Assembly: GCA_053919585.1 (NCBI GenBank)
Contig: CM132786.1
Reading direction: 5' to 3' (one strand)
Length of the DNA: 64,000 nt
From: Euprymna scolopes
Taxonomy: Eukaryota
Below, in pieces: positions 10,997 to 63,011 of the stretch. A model generated the notes under the pieces. The model was not told the origin of the DNA, made no database searches, and was given only the letters and a program-made list of their open reading frames with translations. The stretch's first letter is position 1, and each line of letters starts with the position of its first letter. A program made the position numbers and the translations under genes.

Positions 10997-11099
10997 AATA
11001 CGTATAAAATTAAAAATAATATAAATATAAACATTTTTTTTTCCACACATCATCCTTTATGTATTGTTCAGATATATACATTTTTAGATATATTATACA

Positions 11100-11559
11100 C
11101 TAGCCTGGGTGCCCGGCATTGCCCGGGTATTTGGAGGTGTGTGTTGAGCCAAAAAATAAAAATAGGAATAGTAAGCAGGCTCAAACTCGTAATCCGCCAG
11201 AGAAAAAACAGGTGGAAAAAAAAAAAAAAAAAAAGTCTTACCGATGTGCCTATCATGGTTGTGACGTCACGGGCGGTTAAAATAACGCCTTTTATGCAAT
11301 GTCGTTTATGCGAGCTTTGAATGACTTGCAAAAAATGTCAGCAAAAAAAAACAAAAAAAAACAAACGACCCTCTCTGCAGAAAACTGCCCAGTTGAGGGT
11401 GAAGCAATTAATGTTTTGGCCAATTTTTCGATATTTGTCATCCAAAGGGTCGAGCTTCAAAATGATACCGATTTCGTGAAAATCGGTCGCCTCTATCGAA
11501 AGTTTTTGCGAGACATACATACATACATTTAAACAAACGGGTGAAATTTATATTATAGA
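11100..11559 (-). mobile_element. Non-autonomous Helitron, 3'-most unit of a 4-unit array
   Basis: CTAG and CCCGGCATTGCCCGGG hairpin at left; ...ATATTATAGA (TC start on the minus strand) at right. Confidence 0.88.
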
Positions 11560-11701
11560 CTAGCGGGGGTACCCGGCGTTGCCCAGGTGTTTGGGGGTGT
11601 GTATGTAGGAGAGGGTGTCCCTGTTTTAATATTATATAAAAAAAAAACACGATGTTAAGAAAAATTGGAAAAACCAATACAAAGCAAAACAGTGAACAAA
11701 C

Positions 11702-11739
<38 letters not shown>

Positions 11740-12179
11740 AAAAGAGGAAAAAAAGTTTAGGCAGAAAGACAGGCTCGAACCTGAAACATTGAGGCTAAGG
11801 CAGAAAAAAAATGCCCGACACGTTACCCCTACGCCAAAGAGACATACACTTAATAATAGATAAAATTAAACCTTTAAAAACACTTGCAGGTGGTTAAAAC
11901 TAACGCAAACATTTTCTAGGTCAAACATGACGTCATTGTCGTAGTAGCAGGAGCAGAGAAAATGAAGGAACGATTTTTTCGGCACCCCTCCCTGTACAAA
12001 ACTGAGGATTTTAGGGTGAAGGAATTAATGTTTTTGGCCAATTTTTCGATATTTGTCGAGCGAAGGTTTGAACTTTAAAATGATACCTATTTGGCGAAAA
12101 TCCGTGACCCGTGTCGAAAGTTTTTGCGAGGCATACAAACACACATACATACACACATTTTCGCTTTTATATATATAGA
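11560..12179 (-). mobile_element. Non-autonomous Helitron, array unit
   Basis: GA|CTAG junctions at both ends, with hairpin and (CATA)n tract. Confidence 0.88.
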
Positions 12180-12300
12180 CTAGTGGGGGTACCCGGCGTT
12201 GCCCGGGTGTTTGGAGGTGTGTGTGCTCTTAAATAAAGAAGAAACCGGCGGGTTAGGATCAAACCCGAAGCCCTGAGGCAAAGTTTGAAAATAAAATGTG

Positions 12301-12331
<31 letters not shown>

Positions 12332-13280
12332 CGAACCTTTCGTCCAGCCAGAATGAGTTACTGAAAGATTTTTGAATTTATTTAAGTAAGAACCAAATTG
12401 ACAGGTGTCCGCACAGAAGTCGTAGGGCGTTACGACGACATAAGTAATAGCTATTCAGCAAATGAGGTCAATTACCAGGTTTGTTTGTTATAAGCGAAGT
12501 AAAAAAAAAAAGAAAACATAAAAACGAACCTTAAAACTTAAATGGGTGGGGGGTAATCAAAACATCGAAGAAAAAAAAACACAAAAAACTAACGTAAGGC
12601 AAACGAACGATGTTAAATGTAAAAATCGAAAAAACAAAAAATTTTTTAAAAAAACAGAAAAACGAAATAAATAAAACATGTGAAAAATGGCTTAAATAAG
12701 CCTGTTTCGATATTAAAATTTAAAAAAAAATCGGTGGGTACCCGGGTGTTTTGGGTGTGTGGTCAGGGGTGGATAAGCAAAGTAAAAAAAAGCAAAGTAA
12801 AAAAAAACAAAAAAAAAAAAAAAACAGAAAAACGAACGTTACGTGAAAAATGGCTCAAATAACACTGGTTCAATATTTAAATTTAAAAAATCGAAAAAAA
12901 GAAAAAGACATCTCACACTACGATTCGAACCCAAAACATTTAGAGAATGAACCAACGCGCTAACCAACTGAGCTAACGCGATGTACATGAAATTTAGTCA
13001 GTTCTTCAACTATTTAAAGAAAATCAGGTCATGACATCATCTGACATATACGTAGAACCGGTCGTCATCACGAGAGGACCGTTTTTGTTGACCCCAAACC
13101 CCCCCGTCGAAAATTGTCGATTTCGGGGTGAAAAAAATTAACGTTTCTGGCCAATTTTTCGAGCAAAGGATGGAGCTTCAATATGATATAGAGTTTGTGA
13201 ATTTTTGTCGTGTCTGTCGAAAGTTTTTAGCGGACACACAAACAAACATACATACATACATTTTCGCTTTTATATATATA
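12180..13280 (-). mobile_element. Non-autonomous Helitron, composite array unit
   Basis: CTAG/hairpin at 12180; internal degenerate 3' end near 12735; tRNA-like segment at 12917-12982. Confidence 0.85.
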
Positions 13281-13861
13281 CTAGCGAGGGGTACCCAGCG
13301 TTGCCCGGGTGTTTGTAGGTGTGTATGAAAAAAAAAAAAAAAAAAAAACAGGTGCCCGTGAAAACAAAAACAAAGCCTTGATGACGCGCAGTTGGAAAAT
13401 AGTAAAGTGTGAAAAAAAACAGGTGCGCGTTTTTGATTGACGTGACGGCAATAGGTATTCAGCAGTTAGCATTTTGTGCGGGACAGTTTTTAATGAGGTC
13501 AATAAATTGATTTGTTTGTTTTTAAAAACCCGCTCCCCCGTCTGATATGACGATGTCGACATTGACCAAACGTTCACTGGCTCTGGGCCTGTGATTAGAG
13601 TCGAGTTTCGCTTTTTGTTTATACCAAAAACTGAATGTAACGCGTGCCAATGCGGGAAATGTGGAATAATTAACCTTTGAAAATCAATAGACAGGCGAGC
13701 TCCGTGATTAAGTGTGAGATATTACAATTTATAGATGATATAAAAAGTTTTAAGAAGTTGTGAACCGAGCGAGCGCTTCTCTGAAAGAAGCCTTTTGTGG
13801 ACATCGAGGAAAAGCATACATACATACATACATTTTCGCTTTTATATATATAAATAGAAGA
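13281..13861 (-). mobile_element. Non-autonomous Helitron, 5'-most array unit
   Basis: CTAG/hairpin at 13281. The 5' region matches the starts of 8356-8961 and 15663-16420. Confidence 0.85.
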
Positions 13862-14086
13862 TTACTTATGTGATTCTGGATATTTCCTATTAATTTACTT
13901 TGTCTAAAGTAATATGATTTAAAAGGCATCAGGAAACCGAGTAAATGTTTTATTTAACTGTTTAAATAATGTTTTTTTTTTCATCACTTTGTTTAATCAT
14001 TCTTATTACTAAACTCGATACTGGGGGCATCAAATTTAGGGTAACACGAGCTATTCTGAAAAATTTGGACATAATGCTACCGTAAA

Positions 14087-14121
<35 letters not shown>

Positions 14122-14430
14122 GGGCATGTGCTAGTTTTATGTAAATATGCTAATTTGTGTGTTCATTCGTTGTTCAGCATTCACCCCAGGTTAGGTTGAA
14201 CCAGCTTTCTCTGAAGGAGGAAGTGTCAAGGAGTTATTAAATTTACAGGCAGACCCCAGTCACGTTGTGTCCCAGTTGTGAGTCATAGAAATCGATTAAA
14301 TTCAAATATGTTTTAATAAGCGTAAATTTTTCATGCAGGATTAAAATTTTCAATTCTATCTGGGCTCATTAAAGGCAATTATCTGTTAGATCCATATATA
14401 TGACTATTTTCTTTTTTCATTTATATTTTA

Positions 14431-15642
14431 CTAGCTGGCAGCCCAGCGTTGCCTGGTCATACAATACGCTTAAACATGATATATTAATTTATGTAGATTG
14501 TGTATGTATTATAAAATCAATCCTCTATTGATTATTATATACGTGCATGGCGTTGCCTGGGTGTTTGGAGGTGTGTGTTGAGCACAAAAAAAAAAAAAAA
14601 AAAAAAAAGAAAAGTGGTAGTAGGCTGGAAGGCTCAAATCCGTACTGCGAAGGAGGAAAAGAATGTGGATAAAAAAAAAAAAAAGTAACGTCTTTGCTGT
14701 TGTGCCCATCGCCAAACAGGAAGTGACATAGTTTAAATTAAGGCTAGTCAATCAAAAAGAGGGGATGACTTTTGAAAATATCAGCGAGAAAAGCGACCTC
14801 TCCCTGTAGAAAAGTGCCCAATTGAAGGTGAAGGAATGGATGTTTTTAGCCAATTCTTCGATATTTGTCGTCCGAAGGGATGAACTTCAAAATGATACTT
14901 AATCTCGTGATAATCTGACGCCTCTGTCAAAAGTTTTAGGCAGACATACATACATACATTTAAATAGACAGGTGAGATTTATATTCTAGGAGGAATAATT
15001 TGCCCGGTGGACTAATTTGCAAAAAAAAAAAATAAATGAAAAATAATAATGTCATTCATCAAATAACATCTGTGTTTGTTTACAATATCACGTCAGCTTA
15101 TATTTGGGCTTGAAGATGAATGCCCTGGAAAAGTCATTTCTGATTAATGTTTAGTTTTAAAATATGCAAACGAAAAAATGATTTGCAGTGATTTTAAATG
15201 GTACCTCTTATTGTAAATTGAACTCATAAGAAAAAATTAAAATAAAATGGTGAGGTACACCTGGGCTTGAACATGGAATCATTCAATCTGTAGTCGAATG
15301 CTCTATCACTAAGCTATATCACCAGATTATAATAAATCTGGGGGGGGGGGGGGTTCAGAAGAAATGATTTGCTGAAATTTTATTCTCCCTTGCCGGTGTA
15401 ACAAAATATTCCCCTGTAAAAATTATTTTTTATCTATAAGAGAGAAAAACTATTTTTAGGATCAGATTTTTTCGATTTTCAATACTTATTGGATGAATTT
15501 TTTATATAAAACATATCTAAGAACACTGCCAGATATATAAATTACCTTTGTGTGAAATTTGCAAAAAGATAGGCTCAGTCGTTTCGGCACCTGTGAGGAA
15601 GGAACTCTCACACAAAAAGTGACTTTTATATAATCGTAGAGA
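14431..15642 (-). mobile_element. Second-family Helitron containing a nested first-family Helitron (~14543-14989)
   Basis: The 3' end CTAGCTGGCAGCCCAGCGTTGCCTGG matches the uninterrupted copy at 50571. The 5' part matches 56393-56655 in reverse. Confidence 0.8.
15248..15323 (-). pseudogene. tRNA-Cys-derived pseudogene inside a Helitron
   Basis: Minus strand GGTGATATAGCTTAGTGATAGAGCATTCGACTACAGATTGAATGATTCCATGTTCAAGCCCAGGTGTACCTCACCA resembles metazoan tRNA-Cys, but the stems are degraded. Confidence 0.65.
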
Positions 15643-15662
15643 TTTTTATATTTTATATTGGA

Positions 15663-16420
15663 CTAGCGAGGGGGGGGGGGAGAGGTACCCGGCGTTGCCT
15701 AGGTGTTTGGAGGTGTGTGTGGTTTTGGGTAAATCAAAACTCTGAGGTGGGGCGGGGGTTAAAAGTTAAAATAAAAAAGTTTTGGTAGGTGAGTATGAGG
15801 ATCGAACCCGAACCCTTGAGGCGAAGTTGGAAATTAAAGTGTGAAAAAAAAAAAAAAAAGTGTGCGACTTCAACCATTGACCCACCGCGAGATACTAACG
15901 GAAACACGTTTGAATTTATTTAATTACTTAGATTTGGCAGGTGCACGTTTTAATGACTTAATGAGATCAACTTTCACTGCGGGATAGTATTTCATTTACT
16001 GCGGAAAGCTTTTTTTATTTTTGTTTCCCCAAGATGTTGGGGGGGGGGCAGCTCCCCTTGTCCAATTTGAATAGCAATTGTTTGATATAAGGAAAATATT
16101 TCCACATTGATCAAATCTGATTGTTTTCAGACATTTCCGCCGATAGACGGAAAATACCGCCAGAATTAGTATCGCTTTTATTATAGGAAAAAGACTAATC
16201 CACATGCGGCGAACGACTAATGTTGAATATCTTCCCGAAGTTGAGCAAATTAAATAGACAGGCAAGCTCTGTTGTTAACTCAGAGTAACTATAATTTCTA
16301 TGTGATATAAAAAGTTTTAAGTTGTGAGCCGACCGACCGCTTCTCTGAAAAAAGCCTTTCTTGGACATACACAAAAAGCGAACATACATACACATTTTCG
16401 CTTGTATATATATATATAGA
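15663..16420 (-). mobile_element. Non-autonomous Helitron
   Basis: CTAG and hairpin at left, TATATATAGA at right; split A/B box at 15795-15892. Confidence 0.88.
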
Positions 16421-28539: not shown

Positions 28540-29038
28540 CCGTAGATGAAATAATGGTTAACATTCTCCATAGGCTTCGATCCATTGTTGGCCTGATTCC
28601 TCTGAAGACATCACATGATTTGAACATGGCAGAATACATGGGGTGGGCTGCCATTACCTTTCCAGTGCAGTGGCATCTGACTCGCCTGTTTGCACCTATT
28701 CATCGTCCTTTTTAGATCATCCGCATAGCTGCATTCGAATAATGTAACTCTTAATACCATAGAACCGTTGATCTGCTAGAGATTCATCCTCCTCCATGGC
28801 CACCCAACGTCAGTTACCTTCTCCTAGATACATGTCTTAACTAAGACTATGGGTGCAGCTCTCCCAGTGAATTAATGCACCTCCAGATTCCAATCTGGAA
28901 ATTTCTTATGACTCGGTGCAGTACATACAGCACGTAACCTTCCCAAATGGTCACCCATCTGGTACTGGCCAGGCTCATCATTGCTTAACTTTGGTGATCT
29001 GGAGGGAATCGGTGTGTCAACATGATTGTGCCGTATAT
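28540..29038 (-). mobile_element. 5S rRNA-headed SINE (SINE3), body type 1
   Basis: Minus strand 29038-28923 aligns with 5S rRNA (TACGGCAC..GATCACCAAAGTTAAGCA..AGTACCAGATGGGTGACC..GTGCTGTA). The body contains AAGGTAATGGCAGCCCACC, resembling an RTE/Meta-domain motif. Confidence 0.8.
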
Positions 29039-33274: not shown

Positions 33275-33573
33275 TTTGATGCCTCTGTTTAATCTCAAAA
33301 GACAAAGGATACCACCTTTAGGGCCAGCTGCGTGTGTAATTGTGAGGCAAGGGTTGCGCAATCCCCAACCACACCTCTCCTGAATCGGCATTGCTCGAGT
33401 CCAGTGGCAAGGAAAAGTCCAAGACGACTGGAAACAATGCCAAGATAAGTGGAGAACACATACAGCACCTGGAAGTCCCAAATGGTCACCCATTTAGTAC
33501 TGACCAAGTTCAATGTTGCTTAACTTTGGTGATCCAGTGGGAACCGACGTGTTAATGTGATTATGCCGTACTT
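33275..33573 (-). mobile_element. 5S rRNA-headed SINE (SINE3), body type 2
   Basis: Head at 33573-33458 is 5S-like and similar to the 29038-28923 head; the body is unrelated to type 1. Confidence 0.8.
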
Positions 33574-36177: not shown

Positions 36178-36364
36178 TTCTTACTTGGTCAAGATCAAAG
36201 TGTAGTATCTGTTCTTCAGATGCTGCACTTCATTTTCTTGTTCTCTTTCGGTGGAGGAGAAATCCTTCACGACTGAGACAATTTTTATTTTTGTACCTTT
36301 TCTCCAAGTTAAAAAACGACCCTGGTGTCTAACTGTCCCGTGGGGAGGCATAGTAAATAGGTAC
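36178..36364 (+). mobile_element. U2 snRNA-headed structured repeat, copy A (internal deletion)
   Basis: AAGATCAAAGTGTAGTATCTGTTCTT is identical to the invertebrate U2 5' region; the body aligns with 51659-52121. Confidence 0.85.
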
Positions 36365-38128
36365 TATCATTAGATATTTCGATAAATATTTCGATAAATA
36401 AGACCTAATTCGTAAACCTAATATCTGAAATCAAATTTTAAAAAAAAAGTATGGGAAATTTCCTAAACGGGTTATCATTTTTATAATGAAAAGATTTTCA
36501 TTGTTTTATGAACTATTTCAGTTTTTGAATTATTCAAGTAATGTACAAAGTTTATTTCATATAAACAATGACCTAAAAATAGCATTTTCTCTTCTGTACT
36601 AAATCTCCTATGTAAATAGCGCTTATAAATATACTTGATTTGAGATATACAAAGTCATATTCAGCAGCTTATTCAAAATGAAAACAATCTACCAAACACT
36701 ATCATCCCAAACTAAAACAATATTTTATGGAATACAATACAAATCTGTGCTGCTCTGGATGAATAATATCCAAAAAATTTTTTAATTATTCTTTGGCACT
36801 CAACTATTGAAAATTGGAAAAGAAAATGCTGACAATGAAAATGCAGAATTTATACGAGAATTGCCTGTATGTATGTCCAGAGAGAGAAAGGCAGAGGAAA
36901 AAAAAAATAGAGAGGGCGGTAGAAGTTTTGATATAGATAAGTTACATTTTTTCCCAGGGCTATGTTGAGCAACCACATTAGTTAATAATAATGGAAGCAA
37001 TAAATTATTAGATCAAGCCTGCTTAAGTATTGGGTAAAATCCATATACAATATAAATCCATATACAATATAAATCCATATATAATATAAAATCTATATAT
37101 TATGGATTGCCTTTACTTCTTGCATTACTTCTTGAGAGAAAAAAAAAAAAAAAAAAAAAACACAAAAGTGCAACTTTGTTTACATAAAGATTCATTTCAA
37201 CAGCTAATACATAGTCTTTTTAATATGATTCATAACATACTTTGATTTTTCAAGTTAAAAAAAAAAGCATTTTGTTTAACCATTTTCATGTCTTGAAAGA
37301 AATACTTGTATCTCATATTCTAAGATTAGATTTTATTGAACTTTTTAATTTAAAGAAAAATGAACATTCTTTTGCATACCTGTAACAAGTTGAAATTATT
37401 TTTTTGTTTCAATATTCTAATTGGTTGAAAAAGTTATCTCTCTTTCTCATATATATATATATAATTAATAAAATAGACAATTTTTCCTGTCCAGAATTAA
37501 ACATTATAGGAATACAAACGCAGACACCACATTCAAATTTCTATTATAGTTCTGAGGAGAGTCACTTTCCCAAACAAGTCATATTTACAGGTGGTAGTAG
37601 AAGTTACTCGCTCATTATTTTCTACTCTTATTCTCCTCACTAATACCAGAAACTTCTACACATTTGCCATATTTTTTTACAACCCCGGTGTTTGTGTTTA
37701 CTTTTTTTATTCCATACATTTTATATTAATTTTTATCTAACCTACATAAAAAGAACTAAAACTCTTCCTTCACAAGTTCCGATCAATTTGATTGGCTGTT
37801 AACATACGTTTATCAGATTAAGAGAATTTTGAATGGTTAAAAACACCTATCACGAATTAAACCACAAGGTGTCATCCAACAAAACAAACAATCAGATAAT
37901 TTGCACCTAACCAGATCAACTTTTTCGAAATAAACTTCACTTAGGATTTGATTACAGTTACAAGGAGCATTCCAGTTCAAATTCGGAACAGAATAAAAAG
38001 GAGGGAGGTGTTTCTACAGAACTTGAACCTAATCAGATCAACTTTTTTCAAAATAACCCTACGGAAAAAACTTTGCAGTGTCGCTTTTGAATACATTTAA
38101 CGAAACAAAAAATCCGTATAATTTTTCA

Positions 38129-48677: not shown

Positions 48678-48840
48678 CATTACCCCTCACCAAAGATTGA
48701 GGTAATGCCAGGGAATATAGTCTTATGACAACGGAACAGACTGATGAGAGAATAGCAACACTACAAAACAACTGCCCCTCCCTGAAAAGGAGGTAATGCC
48801 TGGTAAGATGATCTCATGACAACAGGACAGATACTACACT
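48678..48840 (-). repeat. Duplicated ~70-bp unit ending in antisense U2 branch-point-recognition sequence
   Basis: ACAGATACTACACT at 48827-48840 is the reverse complement of U2 AGTGTAGTATCTGT; units start near 48678 and 48770. Confidence 0.55.
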
Positions 48841-50240: not shown

Positions 50241-50450
50241 TTTTGGCATTTAGACCAGGAGCCAAGTGTAGTATCTGTTCTGATGCTATACTTAATCTTT
50301 TCTGTCCTCAATCAGTGAAGGAGAAATTTTTAGGAAATTTTTACTTTCGTTCCAATCTAAAGTGGCCCTTAGGGAACTCGATTATCCCTACATTAAAAAC
50401 TGACCTAATGTCTAACTGTGTTCTCATGCGGAGACAAGTAAATAGAAATA
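50241..50450 (+). mobile_element. U2 snRNA-headed structured repeat, copy B (diverged)
   Basis: AAGTGTAGTATCTGTTCTGATGCTATACTT and a body colinear with copies C and D. Confidence 0.8.
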
Positions 50451-50800: not shown

Positions 50801-51658
50801 AAGAATTTGTGTAATAATGTTCTTTCAAAATAATCGATAAGGTGAGAAATAGAAAATGTTGTCAGAGTTAGCATCAGCTTTTTTTTTTGTTAATTTGTAA
50901 ATAGATTAAAGTCAAATTTCTTTCAGCTAACTTTCCACCTCTGATAAATATACTAATTTGAAATAGTAGATTAGTAGAATGAAAAAAAAAAAAAAGTGTG
51001 GGGGGGGGGGTAACTAACAGCTTCAACCATACACACGCTACAAAAAAATGATATTTAATCAAAGATGAATCTATTCATGCAATCATTAGATGTTATTCAA
51101 ACTTATACATTATTGCTTTACAAGAATTTCTCAAATGAGGATGAAACTAAAACTATGAAAAAAAAATAATTTCAATAAATAGGTTAGTTTTTTGGAATGA
51201 AAGAATCCTTCAGAATGGCAGATGTTACTATCAAGAAGGAATACATGAATAAAAGAGAGAATATTGATGGAAACATTTTTAGAATGCTTTAAAAATTTCA
51301 GCAATCTAATGTGATAATCATTAAGTTTTAAATTATTGGAAAGTAATCCATGTTAAGTGGATTGCCCTAAGAAACTATCCTTGTGTGGATTAGACAAGTG
51401 TGGACAAAGATTTTAGCCAGGTGTTAGTTATAATTTAGATAAGCCATGGATAAAAGATAACACCATAAAAAACTGACCCCATTTTAAGAGACACTGGATA
51501 CCCCCTGAAAGTTGCCTCCTGCATAAGGAGAAGGGATTTAGTAAAAATAAGGGTAGCGCAATTACAAACCATGCTTTTCCTGACCCACAACATTTCTAAG
51601 CTTTGTGGCACAGAGAAATTCAAAGTGATCAGAAACAATGCTCATATAAACAGAAAAA

Positions 51659-51889
51659 TTTTCTTGGCCTTCGGGCCAAGATCACAGTGTAGTATCTGTT
51701 CTGATGTTACACTCCACCTTTTCTGCCCTCGCTTAGGGAAGGAGAAATCCTTTATAGGAAAGACAATTTTTATTTTTGTTCCTATCCAGAGTACCCCCCT
51801 TTTGGGGAGCTGGATTTTTCCCACATTAAAAACTGACTGTTTCTAACTCTGCCCTCGTGAGGAGGCAAGCAAATAGAAACAGATAAAGG
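51659..51889 (+). mobile_element. U2 snRNA-headed structured repeat, copy C
   Basis: TTCTTGGCCTTCGGGCCAAGATCACAGTGTAGTATCTGTTCT followed by a non-U2 body. Confidence 0.9.
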
Positions 51890-52121
51890 TTTTCTTAGCC
51901 TTCGGGCTAAGATCACAGTGTAGTATCTGTTCTCATGCTACACTTCACCTTTTCTGTCCTTACTCAGTGAAGGAGAAATCCTTCATGGCTGAGACAATTT
52001 TTATTTTTGTTCCTATCCAGAGCGCCCCTTTTTGGGGAGCTGGATTTTCTCTACATTAAAAACCGACATTGTGTCCAACTCTGCCCTCATGGGGAGGCAA
52101 GTAAATAAGAACAGATAAGGA
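51890..52121 (+). mobile_element. U2 snRNA-headed structured repeat, copy D (tandem with C)
   Basis: TTCTTAGCCTTCGGGCTAAGATCACAGTGTAGTATCTGTTCT ... ATAAGAACAGATAAGGA. Confidence 0.9.
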
Positions 52122-52720: not shown

Positions 52721-53621
52721 AATTTTTTAACATAATCAGTGAGATTAATATTATTTATTTTAATTGGTTTTAAGGAAAAAAGATTAGTTTTATTGTAGAT
52801 ATGATTTTGCATATTAGGAGTAAAATAATTTGGTTAACTGCTCTAAAAAGCTAGAATGGACTGGAAATGGAGGGGGGGTTACGTTAAACCTATTCTCTCC
52901 TCTAAATTCTAAAATAATTGTTTTATATTTTTCTTTTACTAAGTTTTTTAGTGGGTTCACACATAATTGCCTAACCAAAAAAAGTAGAATCACGTTTGGA
53001 AGAGGGGGGAAAGGGTCAATGAACAAATCCACCAAAATAGTTTTGCAAAATATATGCTGTTTTCAATCATCAAAATATTTTGGCTTTTGACCTGCAGCTA
53101 TCAAGTATTCCGTATCCTTTAAATACAGTCAGCATGTTTGATAAAATTTCTATCATCAGATGAGGAATATTGAACAGCAATGAAATCTATAATTGGAATC
53201 AGAGTGGACAATTCAAAATGAAATATAGAAAATCAATGAGTTCCTGACCTTGAACTAATGAGTAAAAACAAATTCAATGCATCTCACAAGATCCATTCGT
53301 TCTCAGTTAATATAAATAGTAAACTGACAAACTTGGATTTGGATATGCATCAATTTATATGCCAACATTGGATTTTCAAAACAATTTATAGACAAAATGA
53401 TTAAATGCAATAATTTTTGGATTCACAAACCATTTCTATCTCTAAGACAAATCTTTATATCAGTGAGAAATACAAAACATTTGAAAGGCGTGAACATCTT
53501 CACAATAAACTAAGTCTAGAAGATGAACATTTTTTTTTTTTTTTTTTTTTACTTTTGATCACCTCAAACAGGGCATATTGCTACTGAAGCAAAGAATTTC
53601 TGTGATAAATTTATAGAAGGA

Positions 53622-53668
53622 CTAGCTTGGGTTCCCAACGTTGCCCGGGTGTTTAGGGGTGTGTGTTG

Positions 53669-53703
<35 letters not shown>

Positions 53704-53843
53704 TAGTAGGTAGGCAGGCTCGAACCCGTACCACGAAGGAGGAAAAGAACACGAAAAAAAAAACTTGACATGTTTGCTGTTGCATCCATCACCAAACCAG
53801 AAGTGATATAAGTTCAAATTAAGGCTGAGATTTATAGAATAGA
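53622..53843 (-). mobile_element. Internally deleted Helitron
   Basis: CTAG/hairpin at left, GAGATTTATAGAATAGA at right. Confidence 0.8.
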
Positions 53844-53849
53844 TAATCT

Positions 53850-54220
53850 ACGCGAGGATTTAGGCAGCAAGATATTTATTCACATTACATTTAAATTTCT
53901 GCATGTATATAAAATTGAGGGAAATAGGGAGCAGCAAAGGAATTTCAGGAACAAGCAGTCTGAGAAAAGTATGACCAGGAAATCTTGTCATTTACGGACC
54001 TCTACAGTTAAGGGGTGGGATTTACTGCTAGTCAGGTAAGGCAGGTATTTACATTGATGGGGGAGTACAGATGCAGTAAATTCTGAGAACATTTGCAAGT
54101 ACTTGTATAAACCAATCAGAGATACAACGCTGTGACAAATTGACAGGAGTTTAAGATTGGCAGACCATGTGGAACATGGCTAGTGGTTGCTGCACCAGTC
54201 CAGATAAGAGATATGCGTGT
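53850..54220 (-). mobile_element. Degraded CR1/L2-group LINE 3' fragment
   Basis: Reverse match to 7700-8060 (IWTGAATTS; AAATCCCACCC). Confidence 0.7.
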
Positions 54221-54969
54221 TCACTTATCCTCTTACTACTACTACTTTTATCTTATTGAACCTAGGAACATGAAATTTGGTAGGTCTGGCCCTATAACTA
54301 TGCAGTTTACCCTAAGGTTATATCTTTTCACAAGAAATAATGAAACTTCACCAAAATGTTGCTTATTTCTGATTTAACTAAAATTTAAACTAAAAATGAC
54401 CAACAACTACCCTCAAATGAAGACTCACCAAAATTAAAACTTTCAGTAATGAAAACTCGATTGCCATAGATCCATTTAGAAGTGTGTTTGGGAGAAGGGT
54501 AAGATAAACCTCTTATTTCAGTATTAAAAACACATCCTGAGAAAGATAATCCAGCTAGTATGTAATATTCAAAATATAAAAAGAATATAGCAACATCAAA
54601 TTGTATTTTGAATTGCCATCTTTATCTGTTTGGTATAACATTATTTTGTACTAAAGAGCTTTCTTTAAAGGTTTCATAAATCAAGGAAATGGAACCCTTT
54701 CATCTGTTCAAAAAGGTTAATATTTTTCATGGTTATATATGTATATATATTTTTTTTTCTTTCTTTCTTTCTTTCCATCATTCTTCTTAGACTTTAAACT
54801 AAATAAACAATTTTTTTTTTTATATATTACAACGCTTAATGATATTTAATATTATGTTTAAGGTCATCATCATTTAACAGTAATCAATGGGTGAAAATTA
54901 TTGTTTGGTTGTTTAAAATTTAGTTCATTACAAAGTAAAAGAAAATCTTTTTTTATACCTTAGTAAAGA

Positions 54970-55090
54970 CTAGCCTGGATGCCTGGCATTGCACGGATGT
55001 TTGGAGGTTTGTGTTGAGGAAAAAAAAAAAAAAAAAGTGGTAGTAGGCAGGTAGGCTCGAACCTGTACCGCAAAGGAAGAAAAGAATGTG

Positions 55091-55124
<34 letters not shown>

Positions 55125-55438
55125 GTGACGTCTTTGCTGTTGCAACCATCGCCAAACCAGAAGTGCGAATATTGGAATTTTATTAAAGCTAGTCAATCGA
55201 AAAGAAGGGATGACTTTCGAAAATATCGGCAAAAAAACAACCCCTCCCTGTAAAAAAAGTGCCCAGTTGAGGTGAAAGAATGTTTTTAGCTAATTTTTCT
55301 ATATTTGTCGTCCAAAGTAGGGGGGGGGGCTTCAAAATGATACCAATCTCGTGAAAATCCATCGCCTCTGTTGAAAGTTTTAAGCAGACATACAAACATA
55401 CATACATTTAAACAGATAGGTGAGATTTATATTAAAGA
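54970..55438 (-). mobile_element. Non-autonomous Helitron
   Basis: A|CTAG ... GA|T termini; same family as 11100-11559. Confidence 0.88.
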
Positions 55439-62823: not shown

Positions 62824-63011
62824 ATGGCAGTCGGATTTGGATTACAGTGTATTATCTGTTTCGTCAGAGGAAGCGAAAAAGTTTGTGAATTTTTTTTTTT
62901 TTTTTTTTTTTTTACTTATCCAGCTACCTTGATCTGATACCTTTTTAATCAAAAACTCCCTAAATTTTCCCTCGTGGGGATGATGGGGCAAGTAAATAGG
63001 GACAATAAGGA
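62824..63011 (+). mobile_element. U2 snRNA-headed repeat, copy E (highly decayed)
   Basis: GGATTACAGTGTATTATCTGTT, poly-T then TATCCAG, and CCCTCGTGGGGA..GGCAAGTAAATAGGGACAATAAGGA. Confidence 0.65.

What the first reader, a model, noticed from the sequence alone, without database searches (positions are those of the whole stretch)
51659..52121. Mobile ~230-bp family built on the 5' end of U2 snRNA: U2-headed structured RNA, or a Helentron-type element using antisense U2 as its terminus
Seen: five plus-strand copies (36178, 50241, 51659, 51890, 62824) start with U2 nt ~5-47 (stem I, branch-point recognition sequence GTGTAGTA, TCTGTTCT) and then diverge from U2. Stem I has become a perfect TCTTRGCC-TTCG-GGCYAAGA hairpin with a compensatory G-C/A-T swap between copies C and D. 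The body has GATGCTACAC, which folds back on the branch-recognition sequence; a GAAA-tetraloop stem (CTCAG-TGAAGGA-GAAA-TCCTTCA-nnn-CTGAG); an Sm-site-like AATTTTTATTTTTG; two further hairpins; and a terminal ATAAGAACAGATA, the exact reverse complement of U2 TATCTGTTCTTAT. No poly(A) tail or TSD was seen. Known: SINEU are U1/U2-headed SINEs of crocodilians; Utopia and Keno are non-LTR elements that insert into U2 near this position; Helitron2/Helentron/DINE-1 elements have a 5' subTIR starting with T, an internal partial inverted repeat, and a 3' subTIR followed by a hairpin. Inference: the minus strand fits the Helentron layout (5' TCCTTATCTGTTC, internal ATAGGAACA, 3' AGAACAGATA, hairpin, then TTTTT in copy C). 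This suggests a rolling-circle element that co-opted U2 stem I as its terminator. The alternative is a U2-mimic RNA mobilised by retrotransposition. I do not know of a description of this family.
Basis: partly seen in the sequence, partly recalled or inferred. Interest (0 to 1): 0.88.

Follow-up and report, generated by a model that had tools for sequence, protein, structure and literature searches.

The report
U2-headed short retroposon family in mollusc
The repeats are copies of a very abundant short retroposon (copy-and-paste via RNA) whose first ~45 letters were taken from U2 spliceosomal RNA, a type published only for crocodilians; the rolling-circle (Helentron) reading is refuted, and this scan had already met the family elsewhere in this genome.

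Summary
Five plus-strand copies are present and all begin with U2 nt ~3-47; two of them (C, D) are full-length and in tandem. The family has a 223-nt consensus and at least 10^4 copies in this 5.9-Gb mollusc genome. Only the head is U2: the body alone gives no U2 signal, and genuine U2 genes lie elsewhere.

The copies have a sharp 3' end (consensus ...AATAGGAACA), ragged 5' truncation, no poly(A), and target-site duplications of 7-18 bp that begin at AACA. Copy D is flanked by AACAGATAA(A)GG. This is target-primed reverse transcription, not a Helentron.

- The "antisense U2 terminus" is partly flank and duplication.
- The stem I "compensatory swap" is unique to copy D.

The same genome holds a young 7.07-kb LINE (endonuclease plus reverse transcriptase) that carries the same U2 leader ending at nt 47. 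In 24 of 24 independent loci it sits inside U2 heads of older short elements. A sister family (B) also piles into such heads, whereas family A lands at ordinary sites.

Family A's own partner LINE, its promoter and a discrete RNA were not found.

It is a new variant of the SINEU kind. This scan had already found the family on other DNA of this genome.

The parts
51890..52113 (+). Copy D: full-length member of family A, 93% identical to the 223-nt consensus
   Evidence: BLAST against the consensus covers positions 1-223; Rfam U2 42.6 bits; fold z = -3.8
51656..51881 (+). Copy C: full-length member of family A, 89% identical to the consensus; the older member of the tandem pair
   Evidence: Copy D's duplication includes C's last four bases, so D inserted at C's 3' end.
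51891..51933 (+). U2-derived leader of copy D (U2 nt ~5-47): stem I hairpin 51893-51912, branch-point recognition sequence GTGTAGTA 51918-51925, ending ...TCTGTTCT
   Evidence: Consensus positions 2-46 are 87% identical to the genome's own U2. The Rfam signal disappears when the leader is removed.
51934..51943 (+). First non-U2 bases (CATGCTACAC), which pair back onto the branch-point recognition sequence
   Evidence: Minimum-energy fold. The stem is kept in the old subfamily, with one U-G pair becoming U-A.
51963..51993 (+). GAAA-tetraloop hairpin. Pair 76-96 is A-T in the young subfamily and G-C in the old one.
51996..52009 (+). T-rich tract AATTTTTATTTTTG. It resembles an Sm site, has no statistical support as U2 homology, and would terminate RNA polymerase III.
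52017..52043 (+). Hairpin within a ~31-nt segment that is absent from the old subfamily
52081..52113 (+). Tail hairpin and 3' terminus ...AGTAAATAAGAACA. The family's 3' end is sharp. The terminal GG(A/T)ACA covaries with the internal TGT(T/A)CC.
51878..51889 (+). Target-site duplication of copy D, upstream copy (AACAGATAAAGG). Its first four bases are the end of copy C.
   Evidence: read directly from the sequence
52110..52120 (+). Target-site duplication of copy D, downstream copy (AACAGATAAGG)
51648..51654 (+). Probable short duplication of copy C (AAACAGA, repeated at 51877-51883). Weak evidence.
36180..36365 (+). Copy of the older A subfamily: head with CAAAG, TCA after nt 47, no ~31-nt hairpin segment, tail ending ...AATAGGTAC
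50241..50450 (+). Decayed family A copy, 77% identical to the consensus
62824..63004 (+). Strongly decayed copy. Only the head core and the last ~45 nt are recognisable, with a poly-T tract inside.

Best explanation
Family A is a non-autonomous non-LTR retroposon (a SINE in the broad sense, of the SINEU type).

What is shown:
- Its RNA starts with an inherited leader copied from U2 snRNA nt ~3-47.
- The leader is followed by a ~175-nt non-U2 body of several hairpins, and the RNA ends ...AAAUAGGAACA without poly(A).
- New copies insert at ordinary genomic sites that carry AACA. The nicked bottom strand would end ...TGTT, which can pair with the RNA's 3' end.
- Insertion produces 7-18-bp target-site duplications and frequent 5' truncation.
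- The end of a resident copy is itself a perfect AACA site, so copies sometimes land head-to-tail. That is how the C-D pair in this window arose.

What is inferred:
- Copying is done by a LINE's endonuclease and reverse transcriptase through target-primed reverse transcription.
- The U2 leader is not a promoter. It is most likely a piece of target site captured when an ancestral U2-homing LINE, or a deletion derivative of one, was transcribed from a U2 sequence it had inserted into. The basis is that a young LINE in this genome carries the same leader ending at the same nucleotide and lives inside U2 heads.
- By spreading U2 heads through the genome, family A supplies landing sites for that LINE and for sister family B.
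For: Copy number:
- At least 5,317 first-look candidates, with scored copies 88-91% identical.
- 8,470 head and 5,801 tail 30-mers at 2 mismatches or fewer, with 0 in reversed controls.

Ends and duplications:
- Sharp 3' end and ragged 5' end in 31 aligned copies.
- Anchored duplications of 7 bp or more in 13 of 30 copies against 3.8% of controls, Mann-Whitney p = 6e-5. Most begin with AACA.
- Two independent cases of a copy inserted exactly at the AACA end of a resident copy: window C-D and L017.
- Family A tails are followed by non-U2 DNA in about 45 of 47 cases.

Only the head is U2:
-.
- Genuine U2 is a 764-bp tandem array on another contig, at 161 bits.

The LINE:
- 7,068 bp with Exo_endo_phos, RVT_1 and zf-RVT domains. 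Its nearest solved relative is L1 ORF2p.
- Copies are 97-99% identical.
- 28 of 28 fetched loci (24 independent places) have 3' ends followed by U2 nt 28-47 and then the body of another U2-headed element.
- 5'-truncated copies are preceded by SINE-type U2 heads, and both full-length copies start right after ...ATCTGTTCT.

Structured RNA:
- Fold z = -3.8.
- Two pairs changed on both sides between the young and old subfamily consensuses, and both changes preserve pairing.
Against: - No LINE with family A's tail was found in the 269 kb I hold. The body does not match the young LINE's ends better than shuffled sequence.
- No discrete family A RNA is shown. Poly(A) RNA reads over the repeat come from both strands about equally, about 98% run on into other sequence, and there are no defined starts or ends.
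- No canonical U2 gene fused at nt 47 to the LINE 5' UTR or to the family A body exists at 2 mismatches or fewer, so the co-transcription origin is unobserved.
- The short families share sequence just after the head (GATGCTGCA-like), so their common breakpoint is partly shared ancestry rather than repeated events.
- 17 of 30 copies lack a duplication of 7 bp or more.
- One related LINE copy from another assembly (63% identical) has no U2 nearby.
- Both strands fold equally well.
Confidence: 0.85

Rival explanations
1. A Helentron/Helitron2-type rolling-circle element read on the minus strand, with antisense U2 stem I as its terminal hairpin.
For: On the minus strand, copies C and D begin TCCTTATCTGTTC. 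They have an internal ATAGGAACA and end with a hairpin. Copies occur in tandem, as Helentron derivatives often do.
Against: - Target-site duplications are present.
- The end bearing the hairpin is ragged and truncated at many positions.
- The 'TCCTTATC' start is flank and duplication, not family sequence.
- Tandem junctions carry a duplicated target.
- Arrays mix the element with an endonuclease/reverse-transcriptase LINE.
Confidence: 0.02
2. Genuine variant U2 snRNA genes or ordinary U2 retropseudogenes.
For: The Rfam U2 model aligns end to end at 45 and 42.6 bits, just under the gathering score of 46. An Sm-like tract sits at about the right distance.
Against: - The body alone gives no U2 hit.
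- Upstream flanks are unrelated between copies, so there is no shared proximal sequence element.
- There are at least 10^4 copies.
- Real U2 genes score 161-179 bits elsewhere.
Confidence: 0.02
3. Not a family with source genes, but many independent chimeras made when a LINE reverse transcriptase switched template onto U2 snRNA. A weaker version: one such switch plus an internal deletion created the head, which is Kojima's model for SINEU.
For: Template switching onto snRNAs is documented for L1 and is proposed for SINEU (PMC4494074). Some arrays, such as L017, are bracketed by a single duplication, as one multi-template event would give.
Against: - All copies share one head/body junction, one body and subfamily-diagnostic changes. 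That excludes independent chimeras.
- The head stops at U2 nt 47. A switch onto U2 snRNA should start at its 3' end.
- The LINE carries the same leader.
- The single-event version cannot be excluded.
Confidence: 0.12

Closest known systems
SINEU (SINEU-1, -2 and -3 of crocodilians; Kojima 2015, PMC4494074)
   Same: Short non-autonomous retroposons with a U2-derived 5' head. They contain internal oligo-T runs that argue against Pol III, they have no known promoter, and they coexist with LINEs that carry U2-derived 5' ends.
   Different: - SINEU all have poly(A) tails. This family ends ...AATAGGAACA with no A-tail and shows AACA microhomology at its targets.
- SINEU is reported only from crocodilians. 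This genome is a mollusc's.
- SINEU prefers a Mariner element as target. Family A lands at generic sites.
- Here the head is always U2 nt ~3-47.
- Sequence homology to SINEU consensuses was not tested, because no Repbase or Dfam copy was available.
Keno (Tx1 clade, APE endonuclease) and Utopia (restriction-like endonuclease), the U2-gene-specific non-LTR retrotransposons (PMC4640811)
   Same: The young LINE found here encodes an APE endonuclease and a reverse transcriptase and is found only inside U2 sequence. Sister family B is followed by U2 starting at nt 39, the classic Keno/Utopia junction. The ~20-bp duplications resemble those of reptile Utopia.
   Different: - The LINE's downstream U2 starts at nt ~28, not nt 39.
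- Its targets in my sample are U2 heads of short retroposons, not U2 genes.
- Tx1-clade placement by reverse-transcriptase phylogeny was not done.
- Family A itself is not U2-targeted.
Stringent-type LINE/SINE pairs, in which the SINE carries the partner LINE's 3' end and has no poly(A)
   Same: A defined, structured, non-poly(A) 3' tail with a hairpin, a sharp 3' boundary, 5' truncation and target-site duplications.
   Different: The partner LINE with this tail has not been identified. The head is an snRNA piece rather than a tRNA, 5S or 7SL sequence with an internal promoter.

Membership tests
SINE (classical definition) | Short, non-coding, high-copy and dispersed | tested here: met
   223-nt consensus with at least 10^4 copies on many contigs
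SINE (classical definition) | Integration by LINE machinery: target-site duplications, 5' truncation, defined 3' end | tested here: met
SINE (classical definition) | Internal Pol III promoter in a tRNA, 5S or 7SL head | tested here: not met
   The head is U2, whose promoter is external (PMC4494074). The body has T5 runs at 51998-52008 that would stop Pol III. No discrete transcript was seen.
SINE (classical definition) | 3' tail shared with a partner LINE | tested here: inconclusive
   The tail is ~78% similar to family B's tail. No LINE with this tail was found in 269 kb, and there is no match to the young LINE's ends.
SINEU | Head derived from U1 or U2 snRNA | tested here: met
SINEU | 3' poly(A) tail | tested here: not met
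   No A-tail in 31 aligned copies
SINEU | Coexisting LINE family with the same U2-derived 5' end | tested here: met
   The LINE 5' UTR is preceded by ...ATCTGTTCT in both full-length copies. Clade not determined.
SINEU | Sequence relatedness to crocodilian SINEU consensuses | not testable with these tools
   No Repbase or Dfam library available
Helentron / Helitron2 non-autonomous element | No target-site duplication; insertion between T and T | tested here: not met
   Duplications of 7-18 bp. Targets begin with AACA.
Helentron / Helitron2 non-autonomous element | Family-wide terminal and subterminal inverted repeats | tested here: not met
   The proposed 5' terminus is flank specific to copies C and D, and the other end is ragged
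Helentron / Helitron2 non-autonomous element | Autonomous partner encoding Rep/helicase with the same ends | not tested
U2 snRNA gene (Rfam RF00004) | Score at or above the gathering threshold over the whole model | tested here: not met
   45 and 42.6 bits against 46. The body alone gives nothing. Real U2 scores 161-179 bits.
Keno / Tx1-clade U2-specific LINE (applies to the associated LINE, not to family A) | APE endonuclease plus reverse transcriptase, with insertion confined to U2 sequence | tested here: met
   (24 of 24 independent loci)
Keno / Tx1-clade U2-specific LINE (applies to the associated LINE, not to family A) | Same insertion site as Keno (downstream U2 from nt ~39) | tested here: not met
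   Downstream U2 starts at nt ~28. Family B uses nt 39 in about 7 of 22 cases.
Keno / Tx1-clade U2-specific LINE (applies to the associated LINE, not to family A) | Reverse transcriptase groups with the Tx1 clade in a phylogeny | not tested
   No reference sequences. The homology search returned unnamed proteins. The nearest solved structure is L1 ORF2p.

The most novel reading that the evidence does not exclude
A two-tier 'landing-pad' system with signs of conflict.
- Family A disperses U2 target sequence to tens of thousands of ordinary sites.
- A U2-homing LINE and its short dependant, family B, then colonise those heads and build head-to-tail stacks.
- The young A subfamily carries an A-to-C change (CAAAG to CACAG) right at the LINE's nick site. 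It received 0 of 24 independent LINE insertions, against about 10 in old-A heads. The change may therefore make young A refractory to colonisation.
- Separately, in families A (old and young) and B and in the LINE, the first bases after the leader pair back onto the branch-point recognition sequence, in different registers. This may hide a splicing-active motif or form a recognition hairpin.
Probability: 0.22. Interest if true: 0.7.

Novelty: new variant of a known kind. Interest (0 to 1): 0.5.

Why it matters
How SINEs acquire heads that carry no promoter is an open question raised by the SINEU paper. This genome holds three things together: a very abundant U2-headed retroposon, sister families, and a young, probably active LINE with the same leader that lives inside U2 sequence. 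The idea that the head is captured target site can therefore be tested here. The system also shows how a site-specific LINE can escape the scarcity of its natural target by using target copies that a short retroposon has spread. For annotators, these elements score just under Rfam's U2 threshold and could be miscalled as U2 genes or pseudogenes.

Tried and rejected
- The Rfam family search of the whole genome failed twice. I replaced it with pattern searches.
- Vertebrate-type U2 patterns found nothing. This species has GATCAAAGTG.
- Family A body against the LINE's 5' and 3' 300 nt: no better than shuffled sequence.
- Body-only Rfam search: no U2 hit.
Truncation and target statistics therefore rest on the 30 best copies plus incidental ones.
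- Canonical U2 nt 1-47 joined to the LINE or family A start: no hit at 2 mismatches or fewer.
- Expression: the poly(A) libraries are uninformative for a small non-adenylated RNA. This locus's unique flanks have zero depth.
- Homology search with the reverse transcriptase: 892 relatives, none named, so no clade or species label.
- A related LINE in another assembly has no U2 nearby in the one copy with DNA. A second contig shows tandem LINEs but gave no DNA.
- Folding energy does not separate the strands.
- No structure or complex prediction was run, because no claim depends on one.

Full report
**Observation**

The window holds five plus-strand elements, at about 36180-36365, 50241-50450, 51656-51881 (copy C), 51890-52113 (copy D) and 62824-63004. 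No other family member, family B copy or LINE fragment is present. C and D are full-length and adjacent, and the other three are an older subfamily or decayed copies. All carry the U2 5' region. Rfam's U2 model aligns end to end to C and D at 45 and 42.6 bits against a gathering score of 46. The opposite strand folds just as well, with z = -4.0, so folding energy does not indicate a strand.

**What is U2 and what is not**

- The genome's real U2 is a 199-nt gene in a 764-bp tandem array on contig C9. It scores 161 bits and its motif has about 1,180 exact hits.
- Two further U2 genes scoring 179 bits lie 113-140 kb from this window.
- Family A consensus positions 2-46 are 87% identical to U2 nt ~5-50.
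- Without the head, copy D gives no U2 match at E <= 10.

Only the leader is U2. The Sm-like T-run has no statistical support as U2 homology.

**Family properties**

- The query found at least 5,317 first-look candidates in a 5.9-Gb genome, and the scored copies are 88-91% identical to it.
- Motif counts at 2 mismatches or fewer are 8,470 for the head and 5,801 for the tail, with zero in reversed controls. The exact 23-nt tail occurs 1,278 times. Given ~8% divergence, this means roughly 10^4 copies or more.
- In an alignment of 31 copies with flanks, the 3' end is sharp (...GGCAAGTAAATAGGAACA) and the 5' end is ragged within stem I. There is no A-tail, and flanks are unrelated between copies.
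- With the downstream repeat anchored at the element's end, 13 of 30 copies have duplications of 7 bp or more, against 3.8% of mismatched flank pairs (p = 6e-5).
- Most duplications start with AACA, the element's last four bases. This fits priming by a nicked strand ending ...TGTT that pairs with the RNA's 3' end.

**The tandem pair**

Copy D is flanked by AACAGATAAAGG and AACAGATAAGG, and the first four bases of the upstream repeat are the end of copy C. The same arrangement occurs in L017, with an 18-bp duplication. Tandem dimers therefore arise because a resident copy's end is an ideal target. These features are those of target-primed reverse transcription and contradict the Helentron model.

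- The 'terminal reverse complement of U2' includes GATA, which is flank and duplication. The family ends AATAGGAACA.
- The stem I G-C/A-T swap is unique to copy D among 36 exact stem I sequences: 30 G/C, 3 G/T, 2 A/C and 1 A/T. It is two transitions in one dead copy.
- A better test compares the consensuses of the young and old subfamilies, because those changes passed through active source genes. Exactly two predicted pairs changed on both sides, and both keep pairing. One is in the GAAA-loop stem. The other is between the internal TGT(T/A)CC and the 3'-terminal GG(A/T)ACA. This is modest support for a structured source RNA with a paired 3' end.

**Context found by following arrays next to fetched copies**

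- L002 and L017 contain other elements with the same U2 leader.
- One of them proved to be the 3' UTR of a 7,068-bp LINE (full copy L069:1662-8729). It has Exo_endo_phos, RVT_1 and zf-RVT domains and its nearest solved relative is L1 ORF2p. Its copies are 97-99% identical.
- In all 28 fetched loci (24 independent places) the LINE's 3' end is followed by U2 nt 28-47 and then the body of a different U2-headed short element.
- 5'-truncated LINE copies are preceded by SINE-type heads. Both full-length copies begin immediately after ...ATCTGTTCT, the same boundary as in family A.
- Sister family B has a tail ~78% similar to A's. In about 19 of 22 cases its tail is followed by U2-head sequence, starting at nt 39 (the published Keno/Utopia junction, PMC4640811), at nt 27/28, or at the head's start.
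- Family A tails are followed by ordinary DNA in about 45 of 47 cases. In stacks, family A is always the 3'-most member.

Family A thus seeds U2 heads at generic sites, and the LINE and family B home into them.

**What remains inferred or open**

- The leader's origin as captured target site is an inference. No canonical U2 gene joined at nt 47 to the LINE or to family A was found.
- The short families share sequence just after the head, so their common breakpoint is partly shared ancestry.
- Family A's partner LINE is unidentified.
- Poly(A) RNA reads over the repeat come from other copies, on both strands, without defined ends. The locus itself is silent in those libraries.
- A 63%-identical LINE from another assembly shows no U2 nearby in the single copy with DNA.
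- Irregular 7.9-8.4-kb steps in the C9 U2 array might be LINE insertions, but the DNA could not be fetched.

**Comparison with what is known**

SINEU (PMC4494074) is the closest known kind. Shared features are a U2 head, internal T-runs, an unknown promoter, and LINEs with U2-derived 5' ends. This family differs by having no poly(A) tail, by AACA-microhomology targets, by a fixed nt ~3-47 head, and by its host phylum. My literature searches found no report of snRNA-headed SINEs in molluscs. Run labels ('mollusc metagenome') indicate a mollusc. That it is a cephalopod is only my guess, from the genome size and the contig numbers reaching at least 46.

Earlier agents of this scan had already described this family and its LINE on other windows of the same genome. 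I used those notes as leads and re-derived the main points here.

**Verdict**

The feature is real. It is a retroposon, not a Helentron, and it is a new variant of the SINEU kind. It is of moderate interest, mainly for the question of where snRNA heads come from and for the landing-pad relationship with a U2-homing LINE.

Noticed in passing
window 28922-29038 (-) and 33457-33573 (-): Two 5S rRNA-like sequences (57 and 50 bits, above the Rfam threshold), 79% identical to each other and 4.5 kb apart. They may be 5S-derived retroposons or pseudogenes rather than genes.
   Followed up: no
window 11090-15740 and 53612-55165: At least eight copies of another short repeat with a conserved core (...GGTACCCGGCGTTGCCCGGGTGTTTGGAGGTGTGTG...) followed by long A-runs. 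It looks like a poly(A)-tailed SINE family. A borderline tRNA-like hit at 15252-15323 (-) lies in this region.
   Followed up: no
L033:1471-1666 (+) and L034:1358-1553 (-), i.e. contig C4 about 113 kb and 140 kb downstream of the window: Two dispersed U2 genes in opposite orientation score 179 bits, higher than the C9 array genes at 161 bits. Their stem I loop is TTAT instead of TTTT. This is a second U2 gene type.
   Followed up: partly
contig C9, about 168,876,484-168,979,695 (outside the window): The regular 764-bp U2 array has five steps of 7.9-8.4 kb, close to one repeat unit plus a 7.07-kb LINE. One unit next to a gap keeps U2 nt 30-52 but lacks nt 1-26. The DNA could not be fetched.
   Followed up: partly
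L069:1662-8729; also L046 and L043-L070: A 7.07-kb LINE with endonuclease and reverse-transcriptase domains, 97-99% identical between copies, with ORFs of up to 822 aa open. It is probably recently active. L046 shows two copies joined head-to-tail through a 23-nt U2 stub.
   Followed up: yes
contig of protein P0004 (ENA assembly ERZ21867824, no DNA served): A related LINE (62-63% identity) occurs as a head-to-tail tandem array with a ~6.8-kb period. ORF1 of 718 aa and ORF2 of 1,155 aa are repeated at least three times.
   Followed up: no
window 48826-48840 (-): An isolated minus-strand match to the U2 head core (AGTGTAGTATCTGTC) with no recognisable family body around it. It is either chance or a very old fragment.
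   Followed up: no
L045-L070, downstream flanks of the LINE: At least three further U2-headed short families are seen only as LINE targets. After the head they continue TTAGAATTAAAGCGG..., TGCTGCACTTAAGATAA..., and TTATCAGCTACGAAAC... (the last with the head reaching U2 nt ~56).
   Followed up: no
runs X8-X12 ('organism B'): Runs of a second, coded species hold about 14% of the sampled 31-letter words of the 1.2-kb stretch. This is probably the repeat itself, which suggests the family also exists in a related species.
   Followed up: no
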